Assembly: GCA_965644315.1 (NCBI GenBank)
Contig: CBFFRQ010000057.1
Coordinates: forward strand, 62,001 to 126,000
From: Caecitellus pseudoparvulus
Taxonomy: Eukaryota; Protista; Bigyra: Bicosoecida
Direction: 5' to 3'
DNA length: 64,000 bases
Part shown: positions 12,475 through 61,039 of the stretch, piece by piece
How positions within the stretch are numbered: the stretch's first letter is position 1
Layout: the number at the start of each line of letters is the position of its first letter
Translations under genes and position numbers: made by a program
Notes under the pieces: model-generated
Seen by the model: only the letters and a program-made list of their open reading frames with translations
Told to the model about the DNA's origin: nothing
Database searches by the model: none

Positions 12475-12905
12475 CTCTTGTTCCAGGACTGAAAAGGTCT
12501 GCTTGGTGCTAGAGGGTAAAATGCCTTGCAGGCTCTTTTCTTCAAGCTGGGAGCAGCGCTATGTTGGCAGGCACCGCTCCGACCCGCTCTGGTGCCACTC
12601 TGGGGGGCGCCTGCTGAAGCCGTGCCAACTCCAGCGCAGGCCTGGTGCAGGGCGCTGGGGGGCACGTCGGAGATGAGATGCGGCCTTGAGGGCACGCACA
12701 CTGCCAATCCTGAGGTTACCGTGGGGTTCTTTCATTTACTGGTCTCCGTCCGCTTTCCTCCCTGGTGTTCTGCAGCACACCCCCCTGGATCGGGAAGCAT
12801 CGATGACCGCCCGCGCGCAGTGCCTGGCCATCCCACTCAGCGCGCACTCCACCCTTCAAGAAAAGTCTGCATTAAACGACAGCAAGTGGATCAGGCGCAA
12901 GCTGT

Positions 12906-15834: not shown

Positions 15835-16074
15835 GGCTCGTCAGGGCACTGCCTGGGGGGGGTGAAGCCTTGTGCCAGGCGAGCCTGCAACTGCTGGTGT
15901 GCCAACACACACCCAAGGTGGGCTGGGTCTGCTTGCCAGCACGCCCTAGGAACGTGTACACATCACGCACATGCATTGCACAGGGCTTTTGTTTTACAAA
16001 AGGCCCCGCTGCGCTGTCACTGCTCCACGCATGTCTCCGTGCCACGCATGCCAGAAATCCCTGCTCTCTGCTAT

Positions 16075-38283: not shown

Positions 38284-40229
38284 ATGCTCGCACGATGCTC
38301 TCGGCAAGCGCTAGTTAGGCGACTTTCCCAATTTTGGCGTCTAGCAGTGCCTCAGTGCGCCTTGCCTCGGGCTCACTTTGGTCAGGACACGCGACAAGGT
38401 GACCCCGAGGCTGACTTGGTGCACGTCAAACAAACCCCTCTCGTTGACGATCTTGAAGCAGCTGTGAGTGGCCCTCCGCTCCAGCGGGTGAGCTCCGTTT
38501 CTCAAATCTACTTAACCACGTTCTGCAGATTCTCACACGAGGCCCCATGAACATGTCTGACTTCATGCGTCATGTGCGGCTTGCATATGCGAGTCCGAGC
38601 CCGCTTGCTTTCCAGCCGACTTCACTCGCTTCCCGCAGTGCTTGCGACACCCAGAGCATGGGTATTACATGCAGAGCAACGTCTTTGGTCGATCAGGGGA
38701 CTTTATCACCTCCCCTGAGATCAGCCCGCTGTTTGGGGAGCATATTGCCTTCTGGTGCGGATCGCGCTGTGCAGCTGCAGCGAGGTGACATCATGCACGT
38801 GTCCTTTCACGCCGATCCATCCACAGGGCGATCTTGTTGTGGGAGCGAATGGGAAAGCCAGAGGAGTTCCACATCATTGAGCTTGGCCCTGGCACTGGCA
38901 AACTCATGAGTGACTTCTTGCGCATGGCAGGTCGCATGCCTGGATTTTATAAAGCTCTCACACTGCACATGGTGGACGTGTCGCCAGCTCTGAAACTGCG
39001 ACAGGCGAAGTCTTTGGGTGTCCAGCCTCCCGCTGGTCTGAAGTTGTCCGTGGAGCTGTTTTCTGGATCTGAGGGGGAAGCGGGGGCGCAAGCGACGTTG
39101 CAGATCCCAGTTGGCCCGAAGGTCTCTTGGTACGCTTCCTTGGGATCCGTTCCCCCTTTGGGTCCGAACCTCATCCTGGCGCACGAATTGTTTGACGCGC
39201 TCCCTGTGCACCAGTTTACATACACAGCCGAGGGTTGGCGCGAGCTGTGTGTGGATGTGGCGGAGGATGGAGCCGCTGGTCCAGACGAGCCGCCATTCCG
39301 CATGGTCACTGCCCCGCACGTTACGCCGGCCCTTGCTGCGTTTCTTGGCCTGACGGGTGACACGACCCAGGGGCGCGGCACCGGTGTTTCGCCAAGGGAG
39401 GCAGATACTGTTCAGGCGTTGCTGAGCGGTCAGGATGAAGCGGATCTGTCAGCTGCCAATGACTTGTGGACCAGCATTCAAGACGTGGCAGCCCGCCTGG
39501 AAGCTCTAGAACAGCAGGGGGGTAGTCAGGCGCCAAGCAGCCCCCTTCCGCATCCTCCCAGCGGGGATGATCCGGCTAGTAGCGAAACGTATGCCGCGCT
39601 GCGCGTGGGCTCTCAGACAAACAAGCTGAGAATGGCTGCTGGAAAGGAGGGCGACGTGGTTGAGTTTTCGCCTGCTGCAGCTGGTCTGGCATATGAAATT
39701 GCAAGTCGTGTGGCCTTATTTGGAGGGGGTGCCTTGATCGTTGACTATGGACACAATCACGCTGCAGGTGCAAGTGTCAGGGGCATCAAGGATCACAAAT
39801 TTGTTTCGCCGCTGGCTTTCCCCGGACGTACAGATCTGAGCGTAGATGTTGATTTCTCGCAGCTCGCACACGCTGCAAAGACGGCTGGCGGCATTAGCGT
39901 GCAAGGTCCCATCACACAGAGTGAATTCCTTCAGCGGATGGGCATCGTGGAGCGTCTGCAGCAAATCGTGGATACGGAGGGAATCAGTAAGTTTATCATG
40001 CCAGGCCTGAGCTGTGTGTTTTTCCTTTTGCAGGCTTGTGTGCTGCCAACTCTCCCACTCTGCAGGTGAAAGTGACAAGGAGGCAGTCATGTCGCAAGTG
40101 GAGCGCCTGGTGTCGCCGGACGCCATGGGCAGTATTTATAAGTTTATGGCATTTATCAGTCAGGAGGCTGCCGATGATGATGCTGGAGAAGTGCCAGGCT
40201 TCCCACCGCCTCCAGAATCTGGACGGTGA
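38284..40229 (+). CDS. NDUFAF7: Mitochondrial protein-arginine methyltransferase NDUFAF7/MidA
   Basis: Spliced GPMNMSDFMR.CLRHPEHGYY...FGRSGDFITSPEISPLFGE, IIELGPGTGKLM, AHELFDALPV, GGALIVDYG, PGRTDLSVDVDF, MGSIYK. Introns 38464-38528, 38574-38638, 38755-38826, 39987-40065. Confidence 0.92.
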
Positions 40230-41941
40230 AAGGCAGCGGAGGGAGACTTGTCGAACATTGAAGCCGTTGCGTGCAGCAGCTCTTTGTGAGCCTGCTTCGC
40301 CGCCTTCCATGCATGCCGAGCACCTTTGCTCGCTGCTGGCACAATGGTAGTGAGTTGTGGAGGGTCACCTTGCCAGCCTGCAAGAGTTTCCCACAACTTT
40401 GCTGGGTCCAGCGCGCAGATGTCAAAAGCAGACCCACCTGCGCTGTCCAAAATGCACGTTTGAGCATGGATCATGAGCCCAAGCATTGTAAGGGAGGGAG
40501 CACCCCTGCCTTGCGACCCTTGGCCGGTCGGAATGAAAACAGACCGGTTGAGGGCGCAGGCAAGCACATGTTGCCAAGCGTGACTGTGCTCCAAGGCCCC
40601 CCCGCTCCCAACGCAGCTGCCGCTGGCAAGCGCTGGAAAGACTTGAGTGAGGTGGTCCAAGATTATTGCCAAGTGAAACGCCACGCCCTGCATGCGCCCC
40701 TGAACATGCTCTTGTAGCCCTGTGGATCGAGATAGCCCGGCCAACACTCCGGCAGCTCTTGGGCGGTGAGAAGGAAAGCGCTCGCCCCCGAAGGCGGGCA
40801 GGCATGAGAGTGCACAAGGGCGAAGCCCACCCTCAAGCTGCCCTTGAGATGCAATGGCACCGAGGGCTCCTTGGATGCAGGTGTCCGCCGCCTCGAGCGG
40901 CAAGCCTGCCATGGCCAAGCTGGAGGAAAGGAGTGCAGTCACGTCATCCAAAACTGCGCCGCCATCCGTCAAAGCTGCGCCGACTAGCAAAGCCTTGGAG
41001 CTGATCCGGTACGCCCAGCCACCTGATACCTGCACAAATGATCGGAGAGCTTCCCGCTGCCCTTCTGTAGAAGGCAGGGGCACGATGACCCGCACTGCTG
41101 CAGTTGTCCCAATGCTCACCGCTACGACCGGAGTGGGGAGCCCACTTGCGGCAGCCAAGGCATGGCTCCCCAGGGATGCAGCCGCTCCATCGCCAATACA
41201 GGGCAGTCCTGACAGATGCGGAATGTGCAGACCACCTGGCGGGGTTGGCGTGGAGGGTACATCGCTCAGCGCCGCAAGGTGACCCAAGCACCACTGCAGC
41301 GTAGGGGGGGCCTGAAGCGCCAAAGCACTCTTGACGCCAACCAAAGCTGGGGAGTCAACTTCTATGTCCATAACCCCTAACCATGAGGCCTCGCTGATGC
41401 TTACGTGTGCATCTGCCCCGCAAACCTCCCTCAGAATCAAGCCGCCGATGCTCATGAGGACCGGCCTTTGAAGGCCTTCGGCATTTGCACACAAGGTGGC
41501 CGACATGCCTGCCAAGTAGCTGCTACTCGATGCTCTAGTCCCAGTGGAAGCCATCCAATCTACCTCCCAACTCCATCCGCTTTCAGAGGTTGGAGTGATT
41601 GCCTGGCTTGGCCCCCCATCAAACGCGTAGGTCAGCAATTGCCGCCCACCCAGATCGAGAGAGTCACGCTCACAGGCACAGCAAGAGCCCACGAAGCTCG
41701 TGCAAGCTAAAATTATGGGCTGTAGGTTCCCCTTTCGTGCGTGCGATGCGAGCGCGGAGCTGATCGCCCGCACACACAATCGCACCACACAATCGGCTGA
41801 GTGCACTCCACCTTCCTGCCGAGGCATCTCGACGCAAGTATGCGCCTCAACCTTCCAAAACCCCGCAGTCCATACACCTGCACGTATTCTACTAGATCCA
41901 ATGTCCAGGAGCAGCACAGACGTGCCATCCGTGACAGCCAT
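40160..41941 (-). CDS. FGGY-family carbohydrate kinase (gluconokinase/xylulokinase-like)
   Basis: LLLDIGSSRIRAG, IGDGAAASLGS, VSIGTTAAVR, ALTDGG, LPAFGGERFP, GSGGALEHS..W..VLA. ATG at 41941. Confidence 0.82.
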   Translation of the reverse strand: MAVTDGTSVLLLDIGSSRIRAGVWTAGFWKVEAHTCVEMPRQEGGVHSADCVVRLCVRAISSALASHARKGNLQPIILACTSFVGSCCACERDSLDLGGRQLLTYAFDGGPSQAITPTSESGWSWEVDWMASTGTRASSSSYLAGMSATLCANAEGLQRPVLMSIGGLILREVCGADAHVSISEASWLGVMDIEVDSPALVGVKSALALQAPPTLQWCLGHLAALSDVPSTPTPPGGLHIPHLSGLPCIGDGAAASLGSHALAAASGLPTPVVAVSIGTTAAVRVIVPLPSTEGQREALRSFVQVSGGWAYRISSKALLVGAALTDGGAVLDDVTALLSSSLAMAGLPLEAADTCIQGALGAIASQGQLEGGLRPCALSCLPAFGGERFPSHRPRAAGVLAGLSRSTGLQEHVQGRMQGVAFHLAIILDHLTQVFPALASGSCVGSGGALEHSHAWQHVLACALNRSVFIPTGQGSQGRGAPSLTMLGLMIHAQTCILDSAGGSAFDICALDPAKLWETLAGWQGDPPQLTTIVPAASKGARHAWKAAKQAHKELLHATASMFDKSPSAAFHRPDSGGGGKPGTSPASSSAAS

Positions 41942-42228
41942 GCGTGTGGTGGACGGTGGACGGTCGTGCGGAAATTGCTTGCCGGTGTGAGCGGCGAGAC
42001 GCCCCCCGCCAACTTCCTGTAGCTTCAAGCGCAAAATGCGCAAAGCAGGATTCAGTCTTTCTCCCTGAATTTGTGTCGGTGTAAGTGTCAGGTTTATGGC
42101 AGTTTCATGCGAGTGTTCAGGGTCCCATGTCAGGCAGTCGCTGAGGGATTCATGGACATTCACATTACGAGGCGGCTTCTCCTCTTGTCCAGCGACCATG
42201 CCCACACTTGGGATGCATTGAAGGTAAG

Positions 42229-45200
42229 TCAAATGGCGGCTGCGTCCATGGAGCTGCAGGCTTCCCCGCGGTACCCCTGGAAGCACTTGCACATCCCAGT
42301 GCTGCGGTCGCACACTCCGCGACGGCTGCACTCTGTCGCCTCATTGTGAACCCCTGCGCTTTGTCCATCACCATCAGTGTCTACGGAGCATGAGGCCAGA
42401 CTCCAAGCAAATTCGTACACTCCATCAGCGCATGTCGGGGCAGTGCTGGAGTCGAGGAAGTCCACAAGCAGGCCATGAGCGCCCAGTGGAACGCCGAGGC
42501 TGGCGGGTCCGTACGGCACTGGAGCCCATGGCGACCATGCCGCTGAAATACCCGCCGAGTCTGTGTCTGCTTGCTCCCGGAAGCGGAAAACCACATTTCC
42601 GGTGTCACCTGCATCGCTTGTGCTGGAGCTGCACTCCACCTGTGCCCAAATGTCAGAGTTCCCCACTTCGCTTGCTGCTGTCGTGCCGCGCTGAAGAGCC
42701 ACCCCGGCAGTCATCGCAACCACACTCGTGCTTGTTGAGGGATCAAGGGCGATGAGGCCTGCGTATCTTGGCTGGCAACCAGGGTGGCTGCAGCCTCCTG
42801 CAGCCGGGCATTTGAGTAGGTGTTGGTTTCCTGGAGCGAGCGGGGCATTAAACGTGACCAAATACTGCACCTGGGTTGCCGAGGCAGAGGCTTGTGATAC
42901 TGTCACGCCCCGAAGCGCGAAGCCTGGAAGCTCCAGGAGCGCCTTCTCCAGATTGCTGGCACCTGCTGCACTGGCAACCTGCTGAATGCGCGCTGTTGAT
43001 TGCGAGGCTCCGCGCAGGTCTGTGAAGGCGAATGCGACCTCCTCGCTGGACCAAGCGTCCGTGTTTGTTTTCGAGAACGTTACTCGCTGAACCATGCCCG
43101 CCTCTGAATCGCAAGTGGTAAGAGGGTCGTCCCCTAGCGGGCACGTGCGTTGAGAGCAGTCAACTCCAGTAAACCCTGCGTCGCACTGGCATCGCTGGAC
43201 GCGGTCGGCTTCCCAAGAGTCATACCCCGCTGCCTGCACATCAGGCAGTTCTGAGAGGAATCGGCACTTTCCATTCCCACTGCAAGCATTTGGGCACTTC
43301 TGACGCTGGCATGCGTCGCCCTCGAAGCCCTCAAAGCAGGAACAAGTTCCGGTCGCACGGTCACACACACCACGCCCTGCGCACTCCTCGTTCTGGCGCA
43401 CAGGCGCAGCCTCAGCACCCCATGATGCAGTTGAGGGGCACTTGCGAAGGGAGCAGTCGAAGCCGCCCCACTGAGGGAAGCAGAAGCACCGGCCATATGC
43501 GCGGCAGTACCCATGCCCGCTGCACTCGCTGGGGCAACCTCCCGCCATGCCAAGGTACTTCGGGTCAGTGGACGCAACCGGAACCGGCTTCTTTACAGCA
43601 CCCACCAAGGAAAAGTGCCTGATGTATCCCTTTAGCAGCCCCGTTTGGCAGTTGTACTCATTGTCAAACGTTGGTTGCCACTCTCCATAGCCAAACTGGG
43701 GGTTCTCAGGGTCCTCCAGCGATGCCGTGTACATGACGTAGTACGTTGCTGTACAGTCGAGATTGGTGCCAACATACATCTGCACCTCCACGTCTTTGTC
43801 AAACTGCGTGCCATCAGGGCCGAAATTGAAGACCAGGTCGCGGCTGAGCTCGTCACCAGGCCGCGGTGCTGGCAGCTCCACTCCTGGCTTGACCTCCTCT
43901 GCAGTCAGTGGTACTTGAGACGGCAGCGACTCAGAGGGAATCTCAATGGACATCGCCCCCTTGAAGTCATCGGCGTCAAAGCCTGGTGCTGTGGGGTCGG
44001 CCGCCGCGGCCTCGGCAGTTGACTTCCGAGCTGGCACGCTCACGCTTGTCTTCTGTGCGGGGTTGATCATTTCTTGTGGGAACTTGCAGCTCCGGGTGGG
44101 AAACGTCACCCACGGGTTGTAGTTGCCGAAGGGATTCGCTGCAAGCACGCCGGCAGGCAAGTCCACCCCGCCAACCTTTGCGTTGCCACACGCAGCCACG
44201 CTGATGTTGTTGAAGTATCGCTCCTCGGCTGGCAGGCCTTCACAGGCAATCCAGCGCGCGGCTGGATTTGCGCAGCCTGGAATTTCAATGTCAATCTTCA
44301 TGTCGAAGTGGATGGACTTGGCTCCGTTCGGGAACTCTTCAGCATCCTCACTGCCCAGCATATCTGCCCCGTCAGCCGGGTGGTGCGCAGCCCACGAATT
44401 GTCATCCTCCACAGTCAATCTGAAGTACATCACGCGCTTCTTGGGTGAAACGTAGTCAGCCCAGTTCTCTTCGCGAAGTTTTGTCTCTCCGTCGTAAGCT
44501 GGCGTGCCGCGCAGCTCGTATTCCTTCACGTCAGCATTCTGCTCCTGGCCCACGCGAACGAACGTAAAGGGGCTGCTTTCATCAAAGAGATCGTCAAGAG
44601 TTGACTTGTCGCCACTTGCAATGATGATGTTGTCAGCATCTCCCACAGGGCGAACGCTCGCCTCATCCCATTCGCTGGATTCGGCGTCCCAAGTGGCATA
44701 GCCTCGGTACTCCCATTGAATGACGTGATCCTGCGCAAAGTCCTCGTCCTCATCGTCGATAATTTCGTTAAAGTCCAGGGCAAATCTGTTGAACTGGCTG
44801 TGCATGAAGTCGAGCTTCACGTATTCAACAGTGTACTTCTCTTCCTCAGCATAGTTGTCTGCCGTTGTGTGCGGGAAGGCGCTGGAACTGGACAGCGGCT
44901 CTTCACTACGAATAACGATCTCTGTGGTGTCCTTGTCAAGTGCCACTCTGCCCTGGTCTGCACCAGTGGAACCGCGCACTATGCCACCTGCAACTATGAA
45001 ATCGTGGTGAATGCCATCTCGTCCACTGGCCTGGTTGGGGTCCACCTTCTGCGCTTCATCGTATGGGGCATAGAACTCCACGTACTCCCCTGGGTTGAAC
45101 TTGTCAACAAGGACATTGGGTCTGTCATTGCGATCCAGCACCCGAATGCTCACTTCCTGATCAGTGCACTGCGCATCACCGTAGCCCCCGTTGGTTCCCG

Positions 45201-48200
45201 AGTTGGAAGTGTATGCTTTCCCAGCGTGCGTGTACTCAATGCCCGCCACATCAGCATCCTTCGTGTACCCTGCAACACCATACATGTCACGATCGCAGAC
45301 GCGGATCGTTACCAAGGCGAAGGGTGTCTCTTCGTGGTTCAAGTTCGCAGTTGGGTTGTCAACACTCGTGCCCTCAACATCGCTCTTCACACAAAGTAAA
45401 GGGGCAGTTGGGTCATCAAACTCAAAAACAGGGTCTGATACGACGTAGAAGTACAGGTTATCTTTGTTGCCTGGGAACTGGGCATCAGGGAAAAAGAACG
45501 CGTCATCGCCGACTGTGTCTGCATCACCCAAGCCTTCCCCATTCGCAGCTGCCCACTTCCCCTGGTCATCTGGATCTGACGCGGCAAACTCGGCATCCAC
45601 TTCAGTGAGCTTAAACTTTTCTAATTCATCGATCAGTTTCACACAGTCTCCTGGTTGGGGGTTCTCCAGAATGCCGAACCGGCTGGAGGTTCCGGCGCCA
45701 TGGGTAGCCAACTCACGTGTGCTCATGACAGCGTAGCCATCAGAGCCAGGGGCGCCGCCTGTCCCTAGTGTAAACGATGGAGGGTTGTTTCCTGGAACCA
45801 CCAAGATCTGCAAAGATGCAGAGTCGCTGTGAAGTGGTGCGGGAGTTAGGGTGGCTGGGCTTGGGTCCCGTGCATCCTCCACTGGACTTGCGTGCGACAG
45901 GTCAGCATCTTGGACAACCACTTTGAGAGTGCGGAGCCCCAGATCACCATTTGCCCGATCGGAATCGTCCACAGTTCGGTATTGCACGCCAGATAGCATG
46001 GCTTCAAGTTCGGCCGCATTCAGCGTGTCCTTGGCCAAGCAGCTCAACGTGGGCTTCCCGTTCCAATCAACACCAGACTCTGTTGAGGTCGATTCAAAAG
46101 TGCAACTGTACAGAGATGAAGTAGATTCCATGCGCAACTGCTCTGTTGCGGCTTTTGCAAAGCCATCATCTACCCAGACGATCGCGCGGGTGTAGTTGTC
46201 TCGCCCACCTGTGGTCTCATCCGTGTCACCGTCTGTCACGCTGAGGCTGGGGAACACGACAATGGAATAATCCTTGCTGTCGGTGTAGCCAGTCACAAAC
46301 TCTTGAGCGCTGCTTGAGGAGTCTACAGAAATGGACGGTGGGTCGTTTGTCTGCTGGATACGCACGTACGTAGTGGCCGAGGCGGACTTCTTGTCAGCCT
46401 TTGCCGCGTCCCCGTTGCCAGCGTCAGTAAACGAGATGTCCACTTTACGTAAAACAGGGTCAGGATATGCGTCGTTGTCTGACTGGAAGAGAACTGCACG
46501 GAGAGCTGCGCTCGCGTCCACCATGCTTACACCGTCGCTGCCTGCGACAAGCTCCACAGAACTGCCGTCAGATGAAACGGTGAAGGAATCGATGCTCGCA
46601 GGCGTTGAGTAGTCATCATCAATACTGAGGGAATCGTGATCTGACTCATATCCAGAAGACGAGGAGCCGGACAGGGAAATGGTCACTTTAGAAAGGAACA
46701 GGTCATCTGGATCTGAGAAAAGATCTCCTGTGGTAAGGTAGACAATCGACACAGGGTCCCCGTCCTCCACAAAAGTTACAAACGTAGCATTGTACGATGC
46801 TGACACAACTGGGGGGTCATTGAAGGCTTCGATGCTCAGAGCCACCGCTTTCTCAGCATCATCTGCAATGGCGTTCTTTCCTGAAGACTCAAGTGCCTCG
46901 CCTTCCACCACCTCATCATCAACAATTTCAACAATAATGCTCCGGGTTCCGAGCACAGACTCTGTCAAAACACTCTCCGGGTCGTCACTAACGTGTCGGA
47001 ATTTCACCGTTGCAAGTGCAGCCTGAGCGTTTGACACTGAGGTGGAGCCGCCTGTGGCGACAAGGCTCAACTTGCAGTCGTCCTCGTCATATACCGGCGC
47101 ATCAAAGCCGGCAGGATCAGAGTCGAAAAACAGCAAGTCTTGACCCGAGCCAGTAATGCAGTCTTCAGCAATCGATACGTGGACTTCCGCAATATCAGAG
47201 TCCGTGTCAGAATCACGGGCATCACCATCGTCAAAATCAGTCACGGCGATGCCCACAGGGAAGACAAGAATGCCAGAGCTTTGGTGGTCCTCTTCGTTGA
47301 AAGTCGCTGAAGCTTCATGCGATGTTTCTGCGCTCTTGCTGCTGTCCAGAATGACCACTGGTCTGTTTTGGTTCAATGGAAGAGTCACATCGCCTTTGGC
47401 AGTGGGGCTCGAAGCTGATGCTGCAAGTGAGATCTGTGAGCGCGAACCATCCCACTTGAAAGACAGTTTGGTCGTGTCACTTTCATAAGAAACGGTGTCC
47501 GATTCCAGAGACCCGTCAACTTGCACGAAGTTACCAGCTGACAGCAGCGAAGATGAACTGATAACAAACGAACTGGCCAAAGGTGCAGAGGCCAACGGAC
47601 CACTGTACGAAGCTGAAACAATAACACTGGGCCCTGTTGCCACTGTTTCAATCGTGTCAGAAGCATCCGAGCTGGCAATGAGACTGCCTTCTTCATCGTG
47701 GGCTCGAAGAATAATGCTCGGAGCATATGAGACAGTATCAGAATCACCAGTACCAACAACGAACGAAAACAAATCAGAACCATCCAGTGTGACTGTGCAG
47801 GAGTCTGCCGTGCCCGTCATGGCGCCGTCCAAGAACCACACACTGTCGATGTCAGAGGCAGACAGCGCACGGGCACGGACCGCGGGGGTGCCCGCCTCCA
47901 GGGCACTGGCGTCAGCCTCACACCCCGCCGTGAACGTGATGCCGTCCACACCCGACGCGTACTGCACTGGCCCGGAGAAGGCCAGCTTCACTCGGAATGA
48001 CGGCTCCGACACGTCGCTGCGGGCGGCGTCGGCGCTCGTCTGCACGATGGTCACTGTGGCCGATGGCGTGTACGTGGCGGCGGCGGAGACACCACCTGCC
48101 GTGGCGATGGACAGAGCAGCCGCTGACGCGGCCAGCGTGACTGTGCAGGAGTCTGCCGCGCCCGTCATGGCGCCGTCCAAGAACCACACACTGTCGATGT

Positions 48201-51200
48201 CAGAGGCAGACAGCGCACGGGCACGGACCGCGGGGGTGCCCGCCTCCAGGGCACTGGCGTCAGCCTCACACCCCGCCGTGAACGTGATGCCGTCCACACC
48301 CGACGCGTACTGCACTGGCCCGGAGAAGGCCAGCTTCACTCGGAATGACGGCTCCGACACGTCGCTGCGGGCGGCGTCGGCGCTCGTCTGCACGATGGTC
48401 ACTGTGGCCGATGGCGTGTACGTGGCGGCGGCGGAGACACCACCTGCCGTGGCGATGGACAGAGCAGCCGCTGACGCGGCCAGCGTGACTGTGCAGGAGT
48501 CTGCCGCGCCCGTCATGGCGCCGTCCAAGAACCACACACTGTCGATGTCAGAGGCAGACAGCGCACGGGCACGGACCGCGGGGGTGCCCGCCTCCAGGGC
48601 ACTGGCGTCAGCCTCACACCCCGCCGTGAACGTGATGCCGTCCACACCCGACGCGTACTGCACTGGCCCGGAGAAGGCCAGCTTCACTCGGAATGACGGC
48701 TCCGACACGTCGCTGCGGGCGGCGTCGGCGCTCGTCTGCACGATGGTCACTGTGGCCGATGGCGTGTACGTGGCGGCGGCGGAGACACCACCTGCCGTGG
48801 CGATGGACAGAGCAGCCGCTGACGCGGCCAGCGTGACTGTGCAGGAGTCTGCCGCGCCCGTCATGGCGCCGTCCAAGAACCACACACTGTCGATGTCAGA
48901 GGCAGACAGCGCACGGGCACGGACCGCGGGGGTGCCCGCCTCCAGGGCACTGGCGTCAGCCTCACACCCCGCCGTGAACGTGATGCCGTCCACACCCGAC
49001 GCGTACTGCACTGGCCCGGAGAAGGCCAGCTTCACTCGGAATGACGGCTCCGACACGTCGCTGCGGGCGGCGTCGGCGCTCGTCTGCACGATGGTCACTG
49101 TGGCCGATGGCGTGTACGTGGCGGCGGCGGAGACACCACCTGCCGTGGCGATGGACAGAGCAGCCGCTGACGCGGCCAGCGTGACTGTGCAGGAGTCTGC
49201 CGCGCCCGTCATGGCGCCGTCCAAGAACCACACACTGTCGATGTCAGAGGCAGACAGCGCACGGGCACGGACCGCGGGGGTGCCCGCCTCCAGGGCACTG
49301 GCGTCAGCCTCACACCCCGCCGTGAACGTGATGCCGTCCACACCCGACGCGTACTGCACTGGCCCGGAGAAGGCCAGCTTCACTCGGAATGACGGCTCCG
49401 ACACGTCGCTGCGGGCGGCGTCGGCGCTCGTCTGCACGATGGTCACTGTGGCCGATGGCGTGTACGTGGCGGCGGCGGAGACACCACCTGCCGTGGCGAT
49501 GGACAGAGCAGCCGCTGACGCGGCCAGCGTGACTGTGCAGGAGTCTGCCGCGCCCGTCATGGCGCCGTCCAAGAACCACACACTGTCGATGTCAGAGGCA
49601 GACAGCGCACGGGCACGGACCGCGGGGGTGCCCGCCTCCAGGGCACTGGCGTCAGCCTCACACCCCGCCGTGAACGTGATGCCGTCCACACCCGACGCGT
49701 ACTGCACTGGCCCGGAGAAGGCCAGCTTCACTCGGAATGACGGCTCCGACACGTCGCTGCGGGCGGCGTCGGCGCTCGTCTGCACGATGGTCACTGTGGC
49801 CGATGGCGTGTACGTGGCGGCGGCGGAGACACCACCTGCCGTGGCGATGGACAGAGCAGCCGCTGACGCGGCCAGCGTGACTGTGCAGGAGTCTGCCGCG
49901 CCCGTCATGGCGCCGTCCAAGAACCACACACTGTCGATGTCAGAGGCAGACAGCGCACGGGCACGGACCGCGGGGGTGCCCGCCTCCAGGGCACTGGCGT
50001 CAGCCTCACACCCCGCCGTGAACGTGATGCCGTCCACACCCGACGCGTACTGCACTGGCCCGGAGAAGGCCAGCTTCACTCGGAATGACGGCTCCGACAC
50101 GTCGCTGCGGGCGGCGTCGGCGCTCGTCTGCACGATGGTCACTGTGGCCGATGGCGTGTACGTGGCGGCGGCGGAGACACCACCTGCCGTGGCGATGGAC
50201 AGAGCAGCCGCTGACGCGGCCAGCGTGACTGTGCAGGAGTCTGCCGCGCCCGTCATGGCGCCGTCCAAGAACCACACACTGTCGATGTCAGAGGCAGACA
50301 GCGCACGGGCACGGACCGCGGGGGTGCCCGCCTCCAGGGCACTGGCGTCAGCCTCACACCCCGCCGTGAACGTGATGCCGTCCACACCCGACGCGTACTG
50401 CACTGGCCCGGAGAAGGCCAGCTTCACTCGGAATGACGGCTCCGACACGTCGCTGCGGGCGGCGTCGGCGCTCGTCTGCACGATGGTCACTGTGGCCGAT
50501 GGCGTGTACGTGGCGGCGGCGGAGACACCACCTGCCGTGGCGATGGACAGAGCAGCCGCTGACGCGGCCAGCGTGACTGTGCAGGAGTCTGCCGCGCCCG
50601 TCATGGCGCCGTCCAAGAACCACACACTGTCGATGTCAGAGGCAGACAGCGCACGGGCACGGACCGCGGGGGTGCCCGCCTCCAGGGCACTGGCGTCAGC
50701 CTCACACCCCGCCGTGAACGTGATGCCGTCCACACCCGACGCGTACTGCACTGGCCCGGAGAAGGCCAGCTTCACTCGGAATGACGGCTCCGACACGTCG
50801 CTGCGGGCGGCGTCGGCGCTCGTCTGCACGATGGTCACTGTGGCCGATGGCGTGTACGTGGCGGCGGCGGAGACACCACCTGCCGTGGCGATGGACAGAG
50901 CAGCCGCTGACGCGGCCAGCGTGACTGTGCAGGAGTCTGCCGCGCCCGTCATGGCGCCGTCCAAGAACCACACACTGTCGATGTCAGAGGCAGACAGCGC
51001 ACGGGCACGGACCGCGGGGGTGCCCGCCTCCAGGGCACTGGCGTCAGCCTCACACCCCGCCGTGAACGTGATGCCGTCCACACCCGACGCGTACTGCACT
51101 GGCCCGGAGAAGGCCAGCTTCACTCGGAATGACGGCTCCGACACGTCGCTGCGGGCGGCGTCGGCGCTCGTCTGCACGATGGTCACTGTGGCCGATGGCG

Positions 51201-54200
51201 TGTACGTGGCGGCGGCGGAGACACCACCTGCCGTGGCGATGGACAGAGCAGCCGCTGACGCGGCCAGCGTGACTGTGCAGGAGTCTGCCGCGCCCGTCAT
51301 GGCGCCGTCCAAGAACCACACACTGTCGATGTCAGAGGCAGACAGCGCACGGGCACGGACCGCGGGGGTGCCCGCCTCCAGGGCACTGGCGTCAGCCTCA
51401 CACCCCGCCGTGAACGTGATGCCGTCCACACCCGACGCGTACTGCACTGGCCCGGAGAAGGCCAGCTTCACTCGGAATGACGGCTCCGACACGTCGCTGC
51501 GGGCGGCGTCGGCGCTCGTCTGCACGATGGTCACTGTGGCCGATGGCGTGTACGTGGCGGCGGCGGAGACACCACCTGCCGTGGCGATGGACAGAGCAGC
51601 CGCTGACGCGGCCAGCGTGACTGTGCAGGAGTCTGCCGCGCCCGTCATGGCGCCGTCCAAGAACCACACACTGTCGATGTCAGAGGCAGACAGCGCACGG
51701 GCACGGACCGCGGGGGTGCCCGCCTCCAGGGCACTGGCGTCAGCCTCACACCCCGCCGTGAACGTGATGCCGTCCACACCCGACGCGTACTGCACTGGCC
51801 CGGAGAAGGCCAGCTTCACTCGGAATGACGGCTCCGACACGTCGCTGCGGGCGGCGTCGGCGCTCGTCTGCACGATGGTCACTGTGGCCGATGGCGTGTA
51901 CGTGGCGGCGGCGGAGACACCACCTGCCGTGGCGATGGACAGAGCAGCCGCTGACGCGGCCAGCGTGACTGTGCAGGAGTCTGCCGCGCCCGTCATGGCG
52001 CCGTCCAAGAACCACACACTGTCGATGTCAGAGGCAGACAGCGCACGGGCACGGACCGCGGGGGTGCCCGCCTCCAGGGCACTGGCGTCAGCCTCACACC
52101 CCGCCGTGAACGTGATGCCGTCCACACCCGACGCGTACTGCACTGGCCCGGAGAAGGCCAGCTTCACTCGGAATGACGGCTCCGACACGTCGCTGCGGGC
52201 GGCGTCGGCGCTCGTCTGCACGATGGTCACTGTGGCCGATGGCGTGTACGTGGCGGCGGCGGAGACACCACCTGCCGTGGCGATGGACAGAGCAGCCGCT
52301 GACGCGGCCAGCGTGACTGTGCAGGAGTCTGCCGCGCCCGTCATGGCGCCGTCCAAGAACCACACACTGTCGATGTCAGAGGCAGACAGCGCACGGGCAC
52401 GGACCGCGGGGGTGCCCGCCTCCAGGGCACTGGCGTCAGCCTCACACCCCGCCGTGAACGTGATGCCGTCCACACCCGACGCGTACTGCACTGGCCCGGA
52501 GAAGGCCAGCTTCACTCGGAATGACGGCTCCGACACGTCGCTGCGGGCGGCGTCGGCGCTCGTCTGCACGATGGTCACTGTGGCCGATGGCGTGTACGTG
52601 GCGGCGGCGGAGACACCACCTGCCGTGGCGATGGACAGAGCAGCCGCTGACGCGGCCAGCGTGACTGTGCAGGAGTCTGCCGCGCCCGTCATGGCGCCGT
52701 CCAAGAACCACACACTGTCGATGTCAGAGGCAGACAGCGCACGGGCACGGACCGCGGGGGTGCCCGCCTCCAGGGCACTGGCGTCAGCCTCACACCCCGC
52801 CGTGAACGTGATGCCGTCCACACCCGACGCGTACTGCACTGGCCCGGAGAAGGCCAGCTTCACTCGGAATGACGGCTCCGACACGTCGCTGCGGGCGGCG
52901 TCGGCGCTCGTCTGCACGATGGTCACTGTGGCCGATGGCGTGTACGTGGCGGCGGCGGAGACACCACCTGCCGTGGCGATGGACAGAGCAGCCGCTGACG
53001 CGGCCAGCGTGACTGTGCAGGAGTCTGCCGCGCCCGTCATGGCGCCGTCCAAGAACCACACACTGTCGATGTCAGAGGCAGACAGCGCACGGGCACGGAC
53101 CGCGGGGGTGCCCGCCTCCAGGGCACTGGCGTCAGCCTCACACCCCGCCGTGAACGTGATGCCGTCCACACCCGACGCGTACTGCACTGGCCCGGAGAAG
53201 GCCAGCTTCACTCGGAATGACGGCTCCGACACGTCGCTGCGGGCGGCGTCGGCGCTCGTCTGCACGATGGTCACTGTGGCCGATGGCGTGTACGTGGCGG
53301 CGGCGGAGACACCACCTGCCGTGGCGATGGACAGAGCAGCCGCTGACGCGGCCAGCGTGACTGTGCAGGAGTCTGCCGCGCCCGTCATGGCGCCGTCCAA
53401 GAACCACACACTGTCGATGTCAGAGGCAGACAGCGCACGGGCACGGACCGCGGGGGTGCCCGCCTCCAGGGCACTGGCGTCAGCCTCACACCCCGCCGTG
53501 AACGTGATGCCGTCCACACCCGACGCGTACTGCACTGGCCCGGAGAAGGCCAGCTTCACTCGGAATGACGGCTCCGACACGTCGCTGCGGGCGGCGTCGG
53601 CGCTCGTCTGCACGATGGTCACTGTGGCCGATGGCGTGTACGTGGCGGCGGCGGAGACACCACCTGCCGTGGCGATGGACAGAGCAGCCGCTGACGCGGC
53701 CAGCGTGACTGTGCAGGAGTCTGCCGCGCCCGTCATGGCGCCGTCCAAGAACCACACACTGTCGATGTCAGAGGCAGACAGCGCACGGGCACGGACCGCG
53801 GGGGTGCCCGCCTCCAGGGCACTGGCGTCAGCCTCACACCCCGCCGTGAACGTGATGCCGTCCACACCCGACGCGTACTGCACTGGCCCGGAGAAGGCCA
53901 GCTTCACTCGGAATGACGGCTCCGACACGTCGCTGCGCCGTGAACGTGATGCCGTCCACACCCGACGCGTACTGCACTGGCCCGGAGAAGGCCAGCTTCA
54001 CTCGGAATGACGGCTCCGACACGTCGCTGCGGGCGGCGTCGGCGCTCGTCTGCACGATGGTCACTGTGGCCGATGGCGTGTACGTGGCGGCGGCGGAGAC
54101 ACCACCTGCCGTGGCGATGGACAGAGCAGCCGCTGACGCGGCCAGCGTGACTGTGCAGGAGTCTGCCGCGCCCGTCATGGCGCCGTCCAAGAACCACACA

Positions 54201-57200
54201 CTGTCGATGTCAGAGGCAGACAGCGCACGGGCACGGACCGCGGGGGTGCCCGCCTCCAGGGCACTGGCGTCAGCCTCACACCCCGCCGTGAACGTGATGC
54301 CGTCCACACCCGACGCGTACTGCACTGGCCCGGAGAAGGCCAGCTTCACTCGGAATGACGGCTCCGACACGTCGCTGCGGGCGGCGTCGGCGCTCGTCTG
54401 CACGATGGTCACTGTGGCCGATGGCGTGTACGTGGCGGCGGCGGAGACACCACCTGCCGTGGCGATGGACAGAGCAGCCGCTGACGCGGCCAGCGTGACT
54501 GTGCAGGAGTCTGCCGCGCCCGTCATGGCGCCGTCCAAGAACCACACACTGTCGATGTCAGAGGCAGACAGCGCACGGGCACGGACCGCGGGGGTGCCCG
54601 CCTCCAGGGCACTGGCGTCAGCCTCACACCCCGCCGTGAACGTGATGCCGTCCACACCCGACGCGTACTGCACTGGCCCGGAGAAGGCCAGCTTCACTCG
54701 GAATGACGGCTCCGACACGTCGCTGCGGGCGGCGTCGGCGCTCGTCTGCACGATGGTCACTGTGGCCGATGGCGTGTACGTGGCGGCGGCGGAGACACCA
54801 CCTGCCGTGGCGATGGACAGAGCAGCCGCTGACGCGGCCAGCGTGACTGTGCAGGAGTCTGCCGCGCCCGTCATGGCGCCGTCCAAGAACCACACACTGT
54901 CGATGTCAGAGGCAGACAGCGCACGGGCACGGACCGCGGGGGTGCCCGCCTCCAGGGCACTGGCGTCAGCCTCACACCCCGCCGTGAACGTGATGCCGTC
55001 CACACCCGACGCGTACTGCACTGGCCCGGAGAAGGCCAGCTTCACTCGGAATGACGGCTCCGACACGTCGCTGCGGGCGGCGTCGGCGCTCGTCTGCACG
55101 ATGGTCACTGTGGCCGATGGCGTGTACGTGGCGGCGGCGGAGACACCACCTGCCGTGGCGATGGACAGAGCAGCCGCTGACGCGGCCAGCGTGACTGTGC
55201 AGGAGTCTGCCGCGCCCGTCATGGCGCCGTCCAAGAACCACACACTGTCGATGTCAGAGGCAGACAGCGCACGGGCACGGACCGCGGGGGTGCCCGCCTC
55301 CAGGGCACTGGCGTCAGCCTCACACCCCGCCGTGAACGTGATGCCGTCCACACCCGACGCGTACTGCACTGGCCCGGAGAAGGCCAGCTTCACTCGGAAT
55401 GACGGCTCCGACACGTCGCTGCGGGCGGCGTCGGCGCTCGTCTGCACGATGGTCACTGTGGCCGATGGCGTGTACGTGGCGGCGGCGGAGACACCACCTG
55501 CCGTGGCGATGGACAGAGCAGCCGCTGACGCGGCCAGCGTGACTGTGCAGGAGTCTGCCGCGCCCGTCATGGCGCCGTCCAAGAACCACACACTGTCGAT
55601 GTCAGAGGCAGACAGCGCACGGGCACGGACCGCGGGGGTGCCCGCCTCCAGGGCACTGGCGTCAGCCTCACACCCCGCCGTGAACGTGATGCCGTCCACA
55701 CCCGACGCGTACTGCACTGGCCCGGAGAAGGCCAGCTTCACTCGGAATGACGGCTCCGACACGTCGCTGCGGGCGGCGTCGGCGCTCGTCTGCACGATGG
55801 TCACTGTGGCCGATGGCGTGTACGTGGCGGCGGCGGAGACACCACCTGCCGTGGCGATGGACAGAGCAGCCGCTGACGCGGCCAGCGTGACTGTGCAGGA
55901 GTCTGCCGCGCCCGTCATGGCGCCGTCCAAGAACCACACACTGTCGATGTCAGAGGCAGACAGCGCACGGGCACGGACCGCGGGGGTGCCCGCCTCCAGG
56001 GCACTGGCGTCAGCCTCACACCCCGCCGTGAACGTGATGCCGTCCACACCCGACGCGTACTGCACTGGCCCGGAGAAGGCCAGCTTCACTCGGAATGACG
56101 GCTCCGACACGTCGCTGCGGGCGGCGTCGGCGCTCGTCTGCACGATGGTCACTGTGGCCGATGGCGTGTACGTGGCGGCGGCGGAGACACCACCTGCCGT
56201 GGCGATGGACAGAGCAGCCGCTGACGCGGCCAGCGTGACTGTGCAGGAGTCTGCCGCGCCCGTCATGGCGCCGTCCAAGAACCACACACTGTCGATGTCA
56301 GAGGCAGACAGCGCACGGGCACGGACCGCGGGGGTGCCCGCCTCCAGGGCACTGGCGTCAGCCTCACACCCCGCCGTGAACGTGATGCCGTCCACACCCG
56401 ACGCGTACTGCACTGGCCCGGAGAAGGCCAGCTTCACTCGGAATGACGGCTCCGACACGTCGCTGCGGGCGGCGTCGGCGCTCGTCTGCACGATGGTCAC
56501 TGTGGCCGATGGCGTGTACGTGGCGGCGGCGGAGACACCACCTGCCGTGGCGATGGACAGAGCAGCCGCTGACGCGGCCAGCGTGACTGTGCAGGAGTCT
56601 GCCGCGCCCGTCATGGCGCCGTCCAAGAACCACACACTGTCGATGTCAGAGGCAGACAGCGCACGGGCACGGACCGCGGGGGTGCCCGCCTCCAGGGCAC
56701 TGGCGTCAGCCTCACACCCCGCCGTGAACGTGATGCCGTCCACACCCGACGCGTACTGCACTGGCCCGGAGAAGGCCAGCTTCACTCGGAATGACGGCTC
56801 CGACACGTCGCTGCGGGCGGCGTCGGCGCTCGTCTGCACGATGGTCACTGTGGCCGATGGCGTGTACGTGGCGGCGGCGGAGACACCACCTGCCGTGGCG
56901 ATGGACAGAGCAGCCGCTGACGCGGCCAGCGTGACTGTGCAGGAGTCTGCCGCGCCCGTCATGGCGCCGTCCAAGAACCACACACTGTCGATGTCAGAGG
57001 CAGACAGCGCACGGGCACGGACCGCGGGGGTGCCCGCCTCCAGGGCACTGGCGTCAGCCTCACACCCCGCCGTGAACGTGATGCCGTCCACACCCGACGC
57101 GTACTGCACTGGCCCGGAGAAGGCCAGCTTCACTCGGAATGACGGCTCCGACACGTCGCTGCGGGCGGCGTCGGCGCTCGTCTGCACGATGGTCACTGTG

Positions 57201-60200
57201 GCCGATGGCGTGTACGTGGCGGCGGCGGAGACACCACCTGCCGTGGCGATGGACAGAGCAGCCGCTGACGCGGCCAGCGTGACTGTGCAGGAGTCTGCCG
57301 CGCCCGTCATGGCGCCGTCCAAGAACCACACACTGTCGATGTCAGAGGCAGACAGCGCACGGGCACGGACCGCGGGGGTGCCCGCCTCCAGGGCACTGGC
57401 GTCAGCCTCACACCCCGCCGTGAACGTGATGCCGTCCACACCCGACGCGTACTGCACTGGCCCGGAGAAGGCCAGCTTCACTCGGAATGACGGCTCCGAC
57501 ACGTCGCTGCGGGCGGCGTCGGCGCTCGTCTGCACGATGGTCACTGTGGCCGATGGCGTGTACGTGGCGGCGGCGGAGACACCACCTGCCGTGGCGATGG
57601 ACAGAGCAGCCGCTGACGCGGCCAGCGTGACTGTGCAGGAGTCTGCCGCGCCCGTCATGGCGCCGTCCAAGAACCACACACTGTCGATGTCAGAGGCAGA
57701 CAGCGCACGGGCACGGACCGCGGGGGTGCCCGCCTCCAGGGCACTGGCGTCAGCCTCACACCCCGCCGTGAACGTGATGCCGTCCACACCCGACGCGTAC
57801 TGCACTGGCCCGGAGAAGGCCAGCTTCACTCGGAATGACGGCTCCGACACGTCGCTGCGGGCGGCGTCGGCGCTCGTCTGCACGATGGTCACTGTGGCCG
57901 ATGGCGTGTACGTGGCGGCGGCGGAGACACCACCTGCCGTGGCGATGGACAGAGCAGCCGCTGACGCGGCCAGCGTGACTGTGCAGGAGTCTGCCGCGCC
58001 CGTCATGGCGCCGTCCAAGAACCACACACTGTCGATGTCAGAGGCAGACAGCGCACGGGCACGGACCGCGGGGGTGCCCGCCTCCAGGGCACTGGCGTCA
58101 GCCTCACACCCCGCCGTGAACGTGATGCCGTCCACACCCGACGCGTACTGCACTGGCCCGGAGAAGGCCAGCTTCACTCGGAATGACGGCTCCGACACGT
58201 CGCTGCGGGCGGCGTCGGCGCTCGTCTGCACGATGGTCACTGTGGCCGATGGCGTGTACGTGGCGGCGGCGGAGACACCACCTGCCGTGGCGATGGACAG
58301 AGCAGCCGCTGACGCGGCCAGCGTGACTGTGCAGGAGTCTGCCGCGCCCGTCATGGCGCCGTCCAAGAACCACACACTGTCGATGTCAGAGGCAGACAGC
58401 GCACGGGCACGGACCGCGGGGGTGCCCGCCTCCAGGGCACTGGCGTCAGCCTCACACCCCGCCGTGAACGTGATGCCGTCCACACCCGACGCGTACTGCA
58501 CTGGCCCGGAGAAGGCCAGCTTCACTCGGAATGACGGCTCCGACACGTCGCTGCGGGCGGCGTCGGCGCTCGTCTGCACGATGGTCACTGTGGCCGATGG
58601 CGTGTACGTGGCGGCGGCGGAGACACCACCTGCCGTGGCGATGGACAGAGCAGCCGCTGACGCGGCCAGCGTGACTGTGCAGGAGTCTGCCGCGCCCGTC
58701 ATGGCGCCGTCCAAGAACCACACACTGTCGATGTCAGAGGCAGACAGCGCACGGGCACGGACCGCGGGGGTGCCCGCCTCCAGGGCACTGGCGTCAGCCT
58801 CACACCCCGCCGTGAACGTGATGCCGTCCACACCCGACGCGTACTGCACTGGCCCGGAGAAGGCCAGCTTCACTCGGAATGACGGCTCCGACACGTCGCT
58901 GCGGGCGGCGTCGGCGCTCGTCTGCACGATGGTCACTGTGGCCGATGGCGTGTACGTGGCGGCGGCGGAGACACCACCTGCCGTGGCGATGGACAGAGCA
59001 GCCGCTGACGCGGCCAGCGTGACTGTGCAGGAGTCTGCCGCGCCCGTCATGGCGCCGTCCAAGAACCACACACTGTCGATGTCAGAGGCAGACAGCGCAC
59101 GGGCACGGACCGCGGGGGTGCCCGCCTCCAGGGCACTGGCGTCAGCCTCACACCCCGCCGTGAACGTGATGCCGTCCACACCCGACGCGTACTGCACTGG
59201 CCCGGAGAAGGCCAGCTTCACTCGGAATGACGGCTCCGACACGTCGCTGCGGGCGGCGTCGGCGCTCGTCTGCACGATGGTCACTGTGGCCGATGGCGTG
59301 TACGTGGCGGCGGCGGAGACACCACCTGCCGTGGCGATGGACAGAGCAGCCGCTGACGCGGCCAGCGTGACTGTGCAGGAGTCTGCCGCGCCCGTCATGG
59401 CGCCGTCCAAGAACCACACACTGTCGATGTCAGAGGCAGACAGCGCACGGGCACGGACCGCGGGGGTGCCCGCCTCCAGGGCACTGGCGTCAGCCTCACA
59501 CCCCGCCGTGAACGTGATGCCGTCCACACCCGACGCGTACTGCACTGGCCCGGAGAAGGCCAGCTTCACTCGGAATGACGGCTCCGACACGTCGCTGCGG
59601 GCGGCGTCGGCGCTCGTCTGCACGATGGTCACTGTGGCCGATGGCGTGTACGTGGCGGCGGCGGAGACACCACCTGCCGTGGCGATGGACAGAGCAGCCG
59701 CTGACGCGGCCAGCGTGACTGTGCAGGAGTCTGCCGCGCCCGTCATGGCGCCGTCCAAGAACCACACACTGTCGATGTCAGAGGCAGACAGCGCACGGGC
59801 ACGCGCCACGCTGGTGCCCGCCTCCAGGGCACTGGCGTCAGCCTCACACCCCGCCGTGAACGTGATGCCGTCCACACCCGACGCGTACTGCACTGGCCCG
59901 GAGAAGGCCAGCTTCACTCGGAATGACGGCTCCGACACGTCGCTGCGGGCGGCGTCGGCGCTCGTCTGCACGATGGTCACTGTGGCAGATGGTGTGTACG
60001 TGAATGTAGCGGTTTCACTTGGCTCTACGTTTGGTGTTGTGGAGGAGGAGGCTCCAAGTTGGACACTGATGGAGCTTGTATCTCCGTCAGCAAGCAAGGT
60101 TACGATGTACTCGGTGTCAGATACCGTTGAAGTTGAGACGTAGGTGCACCCGCTCAAAGTGAGAAGGCCGTCTGAGAAGGACGTGAAGCCAACGTCAAAT

Positions 60201-61039
60201 GTAAACTTCGCTTTGAAGCGCCCAGGTGACGAGGCGCCTGCAAGAGTCGCTGTCGACGCATCTGGAATAGTTGTTGTTCCGTCGTCTTCAAGGAGCTCAA
60301 CTGAAGCTTTGGCTTTATATGTGTGAGTGGCAGAAGCAGTGGACGTGGATGATACTTCTGGTGTCGTGCTGTCCCAGGTGCCGGACGCGTCAAAAGAACA
60401 TGACTCTTCGTCGGTACTCATGGAGATTTCCCGAAGATAAAGAGTTGACAATGCAGTTGAGGGAGCGGTCGCCGTCGTGGCGGAGGTTGAGAGGTCCGTG
60501 GCGGCGGAGGTGCAGCCCGTCAGGCGACTTTTTAGATGCGCAGCGGTCGTTGTGACAGGGTGCTCAAAGTCCACTTTCAGCACTAAGGCAGAGTCAGTCT
60601 CAACCAATGCACTCCCAGAAGAGGAGATGAATGAAGCGGAGGTGACTGTCATGGCCGAGACGGTGATCGTGAAGGAATCTGTGACGTCCCCGCTGCCATC
60701 GTTGGCAGTGAGGGTGACAGTTACGACCCCCGCCGCAGGTGGAGTGGAACAACTAATGGAAACGCCACTGTCACCAGCAGTCCCATCAGGCCATGAAGCA
60801 GAATCGGAGTCGCCGGTCACAGAGAAGCAGTCTTGCAAAGCAGTCACAGGGCTTGAAACGGAAACGGAGAAGGAAGTCACCACGCCATCCGTCACAGAGT
60901 TTGGCAGAGTGCTCGAAATCGGCTCCCCTGTAGTTGCAGACGCGATGTCTGAAGGGGCTGTGACACTCAGAGATGCCGCACATGCTATGCAGGATGCAAG
61001 GAGCAGTGCGCTCGCTCCCAACTTCGCCTGCGCTGCCAT
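42229..61039 (-). CDS. Giant secreted adhesin-like protein (~6,240 aa): signal peptide, ~35 Ig-like repeats, cadherin-like units, ZU5, Sig1/Ocm1-type mastigoneme EGF module; frameshift near 53940 as assembled
   Basis: ORFs 61306-53834 and 53961-42229 share the same repeat and join if a 94-bp duplication is removed. Signal peptide MAAQAKLGASALLLASCIACAAS at 61039. NDPP/NDRP cadherin-type motifs. ZU5-like FGPDGTQFDKDV...RHFS. C-terminal CPSECSGHG..DCSLRKCP..ECAGRGVCDRATG..CPLGDDPLT..ECSRRGVCDRSTGMCKCF. No TM anchor. Confidence 0.85.
47785..60000. repeat. Coding tandem repeat, 348-bp unit, about 35 copies, internally identical
   Basis: The helper track shows identical 89-aa off-frame ORFs every 348 bp (17 copies, one junction copy, 16 copies). 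Visible differences occur only in the edge copies. Confidence 0.97.

What the first reader, a model, noticed from the sequence alone, without database searches (positions are those of the whole stretch)
42229..61039. Giant adhesin-like stalk fused to a tubular-mastigoneme (Sig1/Ocm1-type) module: candidate flagellar-hair adhesin
Seen: one secreted, apparently intronless ORF of ~6,240 aa with no TM anchor. The last ~440 aa (43550-42232) have EGF-like units with CSGHG, DCSLRKCP, ECAGRGVCDRATG and CPLGDDPLT, a spacer, and a terminal ECSRRGVCDRSTGMCKCF unit. Established: this Cys pattern characterises the stramenopile Sig1/Ocm1 tubular mastigoneme proteins, which are normally only several hundred aa long and begin right after the signal peptide. 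Here ~5,800 aa of Ig-like extender repeats, cadherin-like units and ZU5 precede the module, an arrangement like bacterial giant repeat adhesins. Inference: the module is built into the flagellar hair while a rod of roughly 38 Ig domains (about 150 nm at ~4 nm each) projects from it, as a lateral or terminal filament for prey capture or surface attachment. I know of no description of such a fusion.
Basis: partly seen in the sequence, partly recalled or inferred. Interest (0 to 1): 0.88.

Follow-up and report, generated by a model that had tools for sequence, protein, structure and literature searches.

The report
Self-cleaving giant flagellar-hair protein
A non-photosynthetic flagellate encodes a flagellar-hair subunit behind a huge secreted stalk, with a predicted self-cutting domain at the joint; the same layout recurs in dozens of unnamed environmental relatives, and I found no description of it.

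Summary
Partly confirmed. As assembled this is not one ORF: a 94-bp duplication (53842-54031) shifts the frame mid-way through about 35 near-identical 348-bp repeats. It is most likely an assembly join; removing it gives 6,238 aa. Repeat number and the 150-nm length are unverified.

The C-terminal module is a true tubular-mastigoneme (Mas/Sig/OCM) protein: PDB 9UFE chains match at E 1e-75 to 1e-48, teneurin at 5e-11.

The domain in front of it folds as ZU5 (Z 10.1) and carries HF|S at the position where PIDD and CARD8 self-cleave. In 49 aligned sequences F is invariant and S/T is invariant. About 57 fused proteins (up to 4,300 aa) cluster together in the module tree, and 45 of 49 long ones share a cadherin-like unit. 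Several lie on single-gene, transcript-like contigs.

Best reading: a secreted precursor that cuts itself, freeing a normal-sized 460-aa hair subunit, with the stalk probably held non-covalently by the cut strand. Cleavage, localisation and adhesion are inferred, not shown. The scan's first stage noted the HFS separately on this window (s1-652877); I found it before reading that note.

The parts
53834..61039 (-). ORF-A as assembled (2,401 aa): signal peptide, unique N-terminal region, first ~17.4 repeats, then out-of-frame tail
42229..53997 (-). ORF-B as assembled (3,922-codon open frame, no signal peptide): remaining repeats, cadherin-like units, ZU5, mastigoneme module
60974..61039 (-). Signal-peptide-like hydrophobic N-terminus (about 22 aa; cleavage point judged by eye)
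59993..60973 (-). Ser/Thr-rich unique N-terminal region with a diverged beta-sandwich unit (59993-60340)
   Evidence: low-confidence model; single copy in the genome
47784..60002 (-). Array of ~35 copies of a 348-bp (116-aa) unit, probably Ig-like; 32 of 33 full units identical
   Evidence: ESM Atlas lead Big_5/SWM_repeat, score 0.94, recognition below threshold; no Pfam hit
53842..54031 (.). Exact 94-bp direct duplication that shifts the frame; probable assembly join
45835..47397 (-). Three cadherin-like units (46855-47397, 46351-46848, 45835-46374), acidic, ending in N-D/N-x-P
   Evidence: ESM Atlas 0.96 to bacterial clusters and 0.94 to a Cadherin_4 cluster; one such unit in 45 of 49 long homologues
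43963..45834 (-). Acidic ~625-aa region of unknown fold, with one further N-D-x-P unit end at 45147
   Evidence: no Pfam hit
43579..43962 (-). ZU5-fold domain
   Evidence: model pLDDT ~90 here; ankyrin ZU5 3ud1_A Z 10.1, rmsd 2.8, 117 aligned; GAIN, CARD8 and UNC5b below it
43609..43617 (-). His-Phe-Ser motif; predicted self-cleavage between Phe (43614-43612) and Ser (43611-43609), leaving a 460-aa C-terminal piece
42232..43548 (-). Mas/Sig/OCM tubular-mastigoneme module: three EGF-like units, CPxGDDP, beta-rich spacer with CxxxGCxP, terminal EGF unit

Best explanation
One gene, broken here only by an assembly join, encodes a secreted precursor: signal peptide, long beta-sandwich stalk, cadherin-like units, ZU5 domain, mastigoneme module. 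After folding in the ER the ZU5 domain cuts itself at HF|S by an N-to-O acyl shift. This yields a 460-aa Mas/OCM subunit of ordinary size that co-assembles into the tubular flagellar hair, plus the stalk. The first strand of the C-terminal piece is the last strand of the ZU5 sandwich, so the stalk most likely stays attached non-covalently and projects from the hair as a detachable appendage. Shown: architecture, family, fold, motif conservation. Inferred: single gene in this strain, cleavage, hair localisation, continued attachment, any adhesive role.
For: Module matches six chains of the Ochromonas-type hair structure 9UFE (profile E 7e-75 to 4e-48; teneurin 5e-11). Best matches are the ~367-aa chains BA and OCM5, over EGFs, spacer and terminal EGF. 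ZU5 fold, with HFS between the last two strands (E115-122, E125-132). In alignment A1 (49 rows, mean column identity 36%): H 42, S 6, G 1; F 49 of 49; S 41, T 8. The motif is 27 residues before the first EGF in most homologues; background HF[ST] is about 1 per 10,000 residues. PIDD cleaves at HF/S after its ZU5 domains, CARD8 and NLRP1 at SF/S, and CARD8 fragments stay associated (PMC3210808). Homologue P0010 (1,923 aa) is the only gene on six ~6.0-6.1-kb contigs from six runs; P0015 (3,803 aa) and P0007 likewise fill their contigs. P0330 lies head-to-head with an ordinary Mas gene; P0154's contig has two more EGF genes of Mas size within 6 kb.
Against: The frameshift may be real in this strain. 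Ankyrin and UNC5b ZU5 domains, the closest folds, are not known to cleave (own knowledge). A minority of divergent homologues lack the motif (ASS, AAM, GFS). Not every Mas protein is in the mature hair: PnMas3 seems to act in development (bioRxiv 10.64898/2026.09.11.750887). 9UFE lists no stalked subunit among the six matching chains.
Confidence: 0.45

Rival explanations
1. Same self-cleaving precursor, but the pieces separate: the stalk is a pro-region or a shed secreted protein, and only the 460-aa module enters the hair.
For: Same motif evidence. Two signal-peptide-bearing stand-alone proteins (P0215, P0048) fall within the wider fused group and begin just before the first EGF, so this module type can exist without a stalk. 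Stalk length varies from about 650 to 3,600 aa.
Against: The cut leaves a ZU5 strand on the module; in CARD8 the fragments stay together. A conserved cadherin-like unit 224-522 aa upstream suggests a lasting extracellular role, although a shed protein could have one too.
Confidence: 0.2
2. The protein (cleaved or not) is not a hair component; the Mas module is reused as an oligomerising base for another surface or attachment filament.
For: The genome has many ordinary Mas paralogues, including L002 in the sister group, which could build the hair. First-stage notes list other giant Mas fusions in this genome (s1-668475, s1-661157; not checked). No full-coverage hit among named oomycete or ochrophyte proteins, which also have hairs.
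Against: Full module, including spacer cysteines, is conserved; two homologues sit next to ordinary Mas-type genes.
Confidence: 0.15
3. One reading: an uncleaved covalent fusion built into the hair, ZU5 being only structural.
For: One ORF in all homologues; non-cleaving ZU5 domains exist.
Against: F and S/T are invariant in 49 of 49 rows while flanking columns vary, and the variants seen (HFT, SFS, HLT) are mostly known cleavage-type motifs.
Confidence: 0.12
4. The frameshift is real in this strain: a truncated secreted repeat protein and an orphan or pseudogenised 3' half.
For: The assembled sequence as it stands. Long identical arrays are prone to slippage.
Against: Both halves stay open for 2,401 and 3,922 codons. 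The break is mid-array between arms of near-equal length. A wild relative (96.9% DNA identity) keeps the 3' end open, with 6 silent and 4 replacement codon changes. Unit-specific splicing cannot easily repair it because all units have the same sequence (inference).
Confidence: 0.08

Closest known systems
Stramenopile tubular-mastigoneme proteins (Sig1-3, Ocm/OCM, Mas1-3; PDB 9UFE chains BA and EA/OCM5)
   Same: Three EGF-like units, CPxGxD, beta-rich spacer with CxxGCxP, terminal EGF; best PDB sequence matches; predicted fold TM 0.72 to an Atlas 'tubular mastigoneme protein' cluster.
   Different: The 9UFE chains are 209-748 aa, with the first EGF at residue 16-21 in five of six chains. Here the module is the last 440 aa of a multi-thousand-residue chain, behind a ZU5 domain.
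Autoproteolytic ZU5 proteins (PIDD, CARD8, NLRP1), Nup98, and GAIN/GPS of adhesion GPCRs and polycystin-1
   Same: ZU5-type beta-sandwich with HF|S before the last strand.
   Different: No UPA, death or CARD domain; no transmembrane segment; secreted; the C-terminal piece is a structural filament subunit, not a signalling unit.
Bacterial giant repeat adhesins (Big_5/Big_12, Cadherin_4 stalks)
   Same: Long acidic Ser/Thr-rich beta-sandwich repeats and cadherin-like units (leads only).
   Different: Eukaryotic signal peptide, no RTX or type I secretion signal noted, no adhesive tip domain identified; order is stalk first, EGF module last.
Teneurin/tenascin EGF proteins
   Same: EGF repeats score with Pfam EGF_Teneurin and EGF_2.
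   Different: 37 to 64 orders of magnitude weaker than OCM chains in the profile search, below the EGF_TEN cut-off, and no match to the spacer or any other teneurin domain.

Membership tests
Mas/Sig/OCM tubular-mastigoneme proteins | Three tandem EGF-like units plus CPxGxD, spacer and terminal EGF | tested here: met
Mas/Sig/OCM tubular-mastigoneme proteins | Closer to OCM proteins than to teneurin/tenascin | tested here: met
Mas/Sig/OCM tubular-mastigoneme proteins | Module begins shortly after the signal peptide; a few hundred residues long | tested here: not met
   would hold only for the predicted 460-aa cleavage product
Mas/Sig/OCM tubular-mastigoneme proteins | Occurs in a flagellated stramenopile with a Mas gene set | tested here: inconclusive
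   Many Mas paralogues; nearest named NDUFAF7 hits are oomycetes; no LHC genes; exact lineage not determined
Mas/Sig/OCM tubular-mastigoneme proteins | Localises to tubular hairs | not testable with these tools
   needs proteomics or immuno-EM
Autoproteolytic ZU5 domains | ZU5 fold | tested here: met
   Z 10.1, rmsd 2.8, 117 aligned to 3ud1_A; Foldseek probability 1.0. Pfam ZU5 does not hit the query; one homologue at E 0.096
Autoproteolytic ZU5 domains | H/S-F-S/T motif just before the last beta-strand | tested here: met
Autoproteolytic ZU5 domains | Actual self-cleavage | not testable with these tools
   needs biochemistry
Bacterial-type giant Ig-repeat adhesin | Repeat unit is an Ig-like domain | tested here: inconclusive
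   No Pfam hit; Atlas lead below recognition threshold; single-sequence model pLDDT 43 with Z up to 6.6 to beta-sandwiches
Bacterial-type giant Ig-repeat adhesin | Ligand-binding or adhesive domain | tested here: inconclusive
   None identified in the stalk by Pfam
Teneurin/tenascin | NHL/YD shell, FN3 or fibrinogen domains, transmembrane segment | tested here: not met

The most novel reading that the evidence does not exclude
Many heterotrophic stramenopile flagellates carry on their flagellar hairs a giant, fast-evolving stalk that is tethered through a self-cleaved ZU5 strand, like the GAIN tether of adhesion GPCRs. It would be a detachable hair appendage for catching prey or touching surfaces, and the first molecular candidate of that kind for hair filaments.
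Probability: 0.25. Interest if true: 0.9.

Novelty: new variant of a known kind. Interest (0 to 1): 0.72.

Why it matters
Tubular hairs define stramenopiles and reverse flagellar thrust. The matching hair subunits in the solved structure are all short (209-748 aa), and functions of hairs beyond propulsion are described as enigmatic (PMC11412368). A conserved subfamily with a long variable stalk and a predicted self-cleavage site gives a concrete, testable candidate for how hairs are decorated in heterotrophic flagellates. It would also extend ZU5 autoproteolysis to a secreted structural filament. A full-text search for 'mastigoneme' with 'ZU5' returned no paper, but the main Mas papers (Hee 2019, Harada 2026) and the 9UFE paper were not readable here, so prior description is not excluded.

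Tried and rejected

Pfam found nothing in the stalk, repeat or ZU5. Pfam ZU5 over the genome rang nowhere, controls included. The repeat found no relative in JGI metagenomes or elsewhere in the genome. The single-sequence model of the repeat was too poor to name a fold. Foldseek did not return 9UFE, probably absent from that library copy, so I could not place the module in the hair.

Synteny: two relatives keep the NDUFAF7-FGGY pair but not this gene next to it. Apparent extra ZU5 domains in homologue stalks vanished with a domain E-value filter. One search had one out-of-frame seed and was redone. The first tree run timed out; only a FastTree tree was made. Homologues carry no organism names, so the family's range is unresolved. 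The long antisense ORFs (47495-54010, 53913-60143) are shadows of the repeat and were rejected.

Full report
Observation. From ATG 61039 the minus strand reads 2,401 codons to a stop at 53834; a second open frame of 3,922 codons runs 53997-42229. Between them one unit of a 348-bp tandem array is 442 bp long, because 94 bp are duplicated exactly at 53842-54031. The copy number (about 35) and the rod length are therefore soft. The signal-peptide-like start, the lack of a membrane anchor and all quoted Cys motifs are as described. The gene is single-copy.

Host. A 30.6-Mb genome with many Mas paralogues, no light-harvesting genes found, a 1,697-nt 18S and oomycetes as nearest named hits of a neighbouring gene. 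This fits a heterotrophic stramenopile flagellate.

The C-terminal module. Pfam sees only generic EGF models. A profile of 49 aligned sequences hits six chains of PDB 9UFE, named tubular mastigoneme protein, OCM3, OCM5 and OCM6, at E 7e-75 to 4e-48; teneurins follow at 5e-11. The best single-sequence matches are the ~367-aa chains BA and OCM5, over the EGF trio, the spacer and the terminal EGF. The predicted fold matches an Atlas tubular-mastigoneme cluster at TM 0.72 by the match.

A conserved family. A search with the last 590 aa returned about 45 proteins that match both the module and the domain before it, many of 1,200-4,300 aa. In one search all full-coverage hits were environmental or Logan sequences; named oomycete proteins matched the EGF part only. 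In a FastTree tree of 172 module cores, all 57 ZU5-fused rows lie in one group of 65 rows (SH-like support 88, not strong). The other eight are mostly fragments, plus two true stand-alone proteins, P0215 and P0048. Neighbouring branches hold short stand-alone Mas proteins, including this genome's L002 (84-row set, support 100). One cadherin-like unit lies 224-522 aa upstream of ZU5 in 45 of 49 long homologues; this gene has three. Homologue stalks have no near-identical repeats, so the 35-copy array is a local expansion.

One transcript in relatives. P0010 (signal peptide, 1,923 aa) is the only gene on six contigs of 6.0-6.1 kb from six runs, with similar short ends. P0015 (3,803 aa) fills an 11.5-kb contig and P0007 a 5.6-kb contig. 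I infer these are transcripts; the library types were not shown. P0330 lies head-to-head with an ordinary Mas gene, and P0154's contig has two more EGF genes of Mas size.

The joint. The AlphaFold model of ZU5 plus module (mean pLDDT 85.7) aligns over residues 5-134 with ankyrin ZU5 (Z 10.1, rmsd 2.8, 117 residues), with GAIN domains, CARD8 and UNC5b lower down. His-Phe-Ser (43617-43609) lies between the last two strands, 27 residues before the first EGF. In alignment A1: H 42, S 6, G 1; F 49; S 41, T 8, with variable flanks. A wider set of 50 adds three departures. PIDD cleaves at HF/S after its ZU5 domains, CARD8 and NLRP1 at SF/S, the cut lies before the last strand, and CARD8 fragments stay associated (PMC3210808). 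Cutting here would leave 460 aa, the size of an ordinary Mas protein.

The stalk. The 116-aa repeat resembles Big_5/SWM_repeat clusters in the Atlas, but below the recognition threshold, and its model is poor. P0022 has a Big_12 hit. The cadherin-like unit scores 0.96 to bacterial clusters and 0.94 to a Cadherin_4 cluster. No ligand-binding domain was identified, so 'adhesin' is an analogy.

Mechanism. Most likely the precursor enters the ER, ZU5 cuts itself, the module joins the hair, and the stalk stays on through the inserted strand (0.45). Rivals: the stalk is released (0.20); the module serves another structure (0.15); no cleavage (0.12); real frameshift (0.08). Bouck 1971 reports shaft assembly in the perinuclear space and addition of lateral filaments in the Golgi of Ochromonas (PMC2108286), so equating this stalk with those lateral filaments is not straightforward.

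Verdict. A new variant of a known family: it works like a Mas subunit and probably like a self-cleaving ZU5 protein, but fails the 'short, module-first' feature of known Mas proteins. No paper in the library holds both 'mastigoneme' and 'ZU5'; key subscription papers were not available. Interest 0.72.

Noticed in passing
window 42360-43140 (-), model residues 282-542: The Mas spacer domain aligns with a mycobacteriophage Bxb1 tail-tip chain (9d93_Ma, Z 10.3, rmsd 2.8, 106 aligned) and other phage virion proteins.
   Followed up: no
L030:8500-17452: A fused homologue and an ordinary Mas gene lie head-to-head, 55 bp apart as called (about 136 bp between likely ATGs), suggesting a shared promoter.
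   Followed up: partly
P0215, P0048: Stand-alone signal-peptide Mas proteins fall inside the wider fused group and keep its MGG-CP start; either the stalk was lost or they branch before the fusion.
   Followed up: partly
window 20827-21987 (+): A separate 386-aa ORF with one teneurin-type EGF unit, 20 kb from the giant gene.
   Followed up: no
L025, L026 versus window 12900-20000 and 38800-42300: In two relatives the FGGY gene is followed by the cluster found at window 12.9-20 kb, not by the giant gene: a local rearrangement.
   Followed up: partly
window 35908-36963 (-): C2H2 zinc-finger gene with twelve 87-bp (29-aa) units.
   Followed up: no
L010 and L012 (G000:C11, C7): Two nearly identical spliced Mas loci on different contigs, either a recent duplication or two haplotypes.
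   Followed up: no
window 22028-27256 and 27333-34274 (-): Two long ORFs (1,742 and 2,313 aa) with no Pfam family apart from IQ motifs in the second.
   Followed up: no
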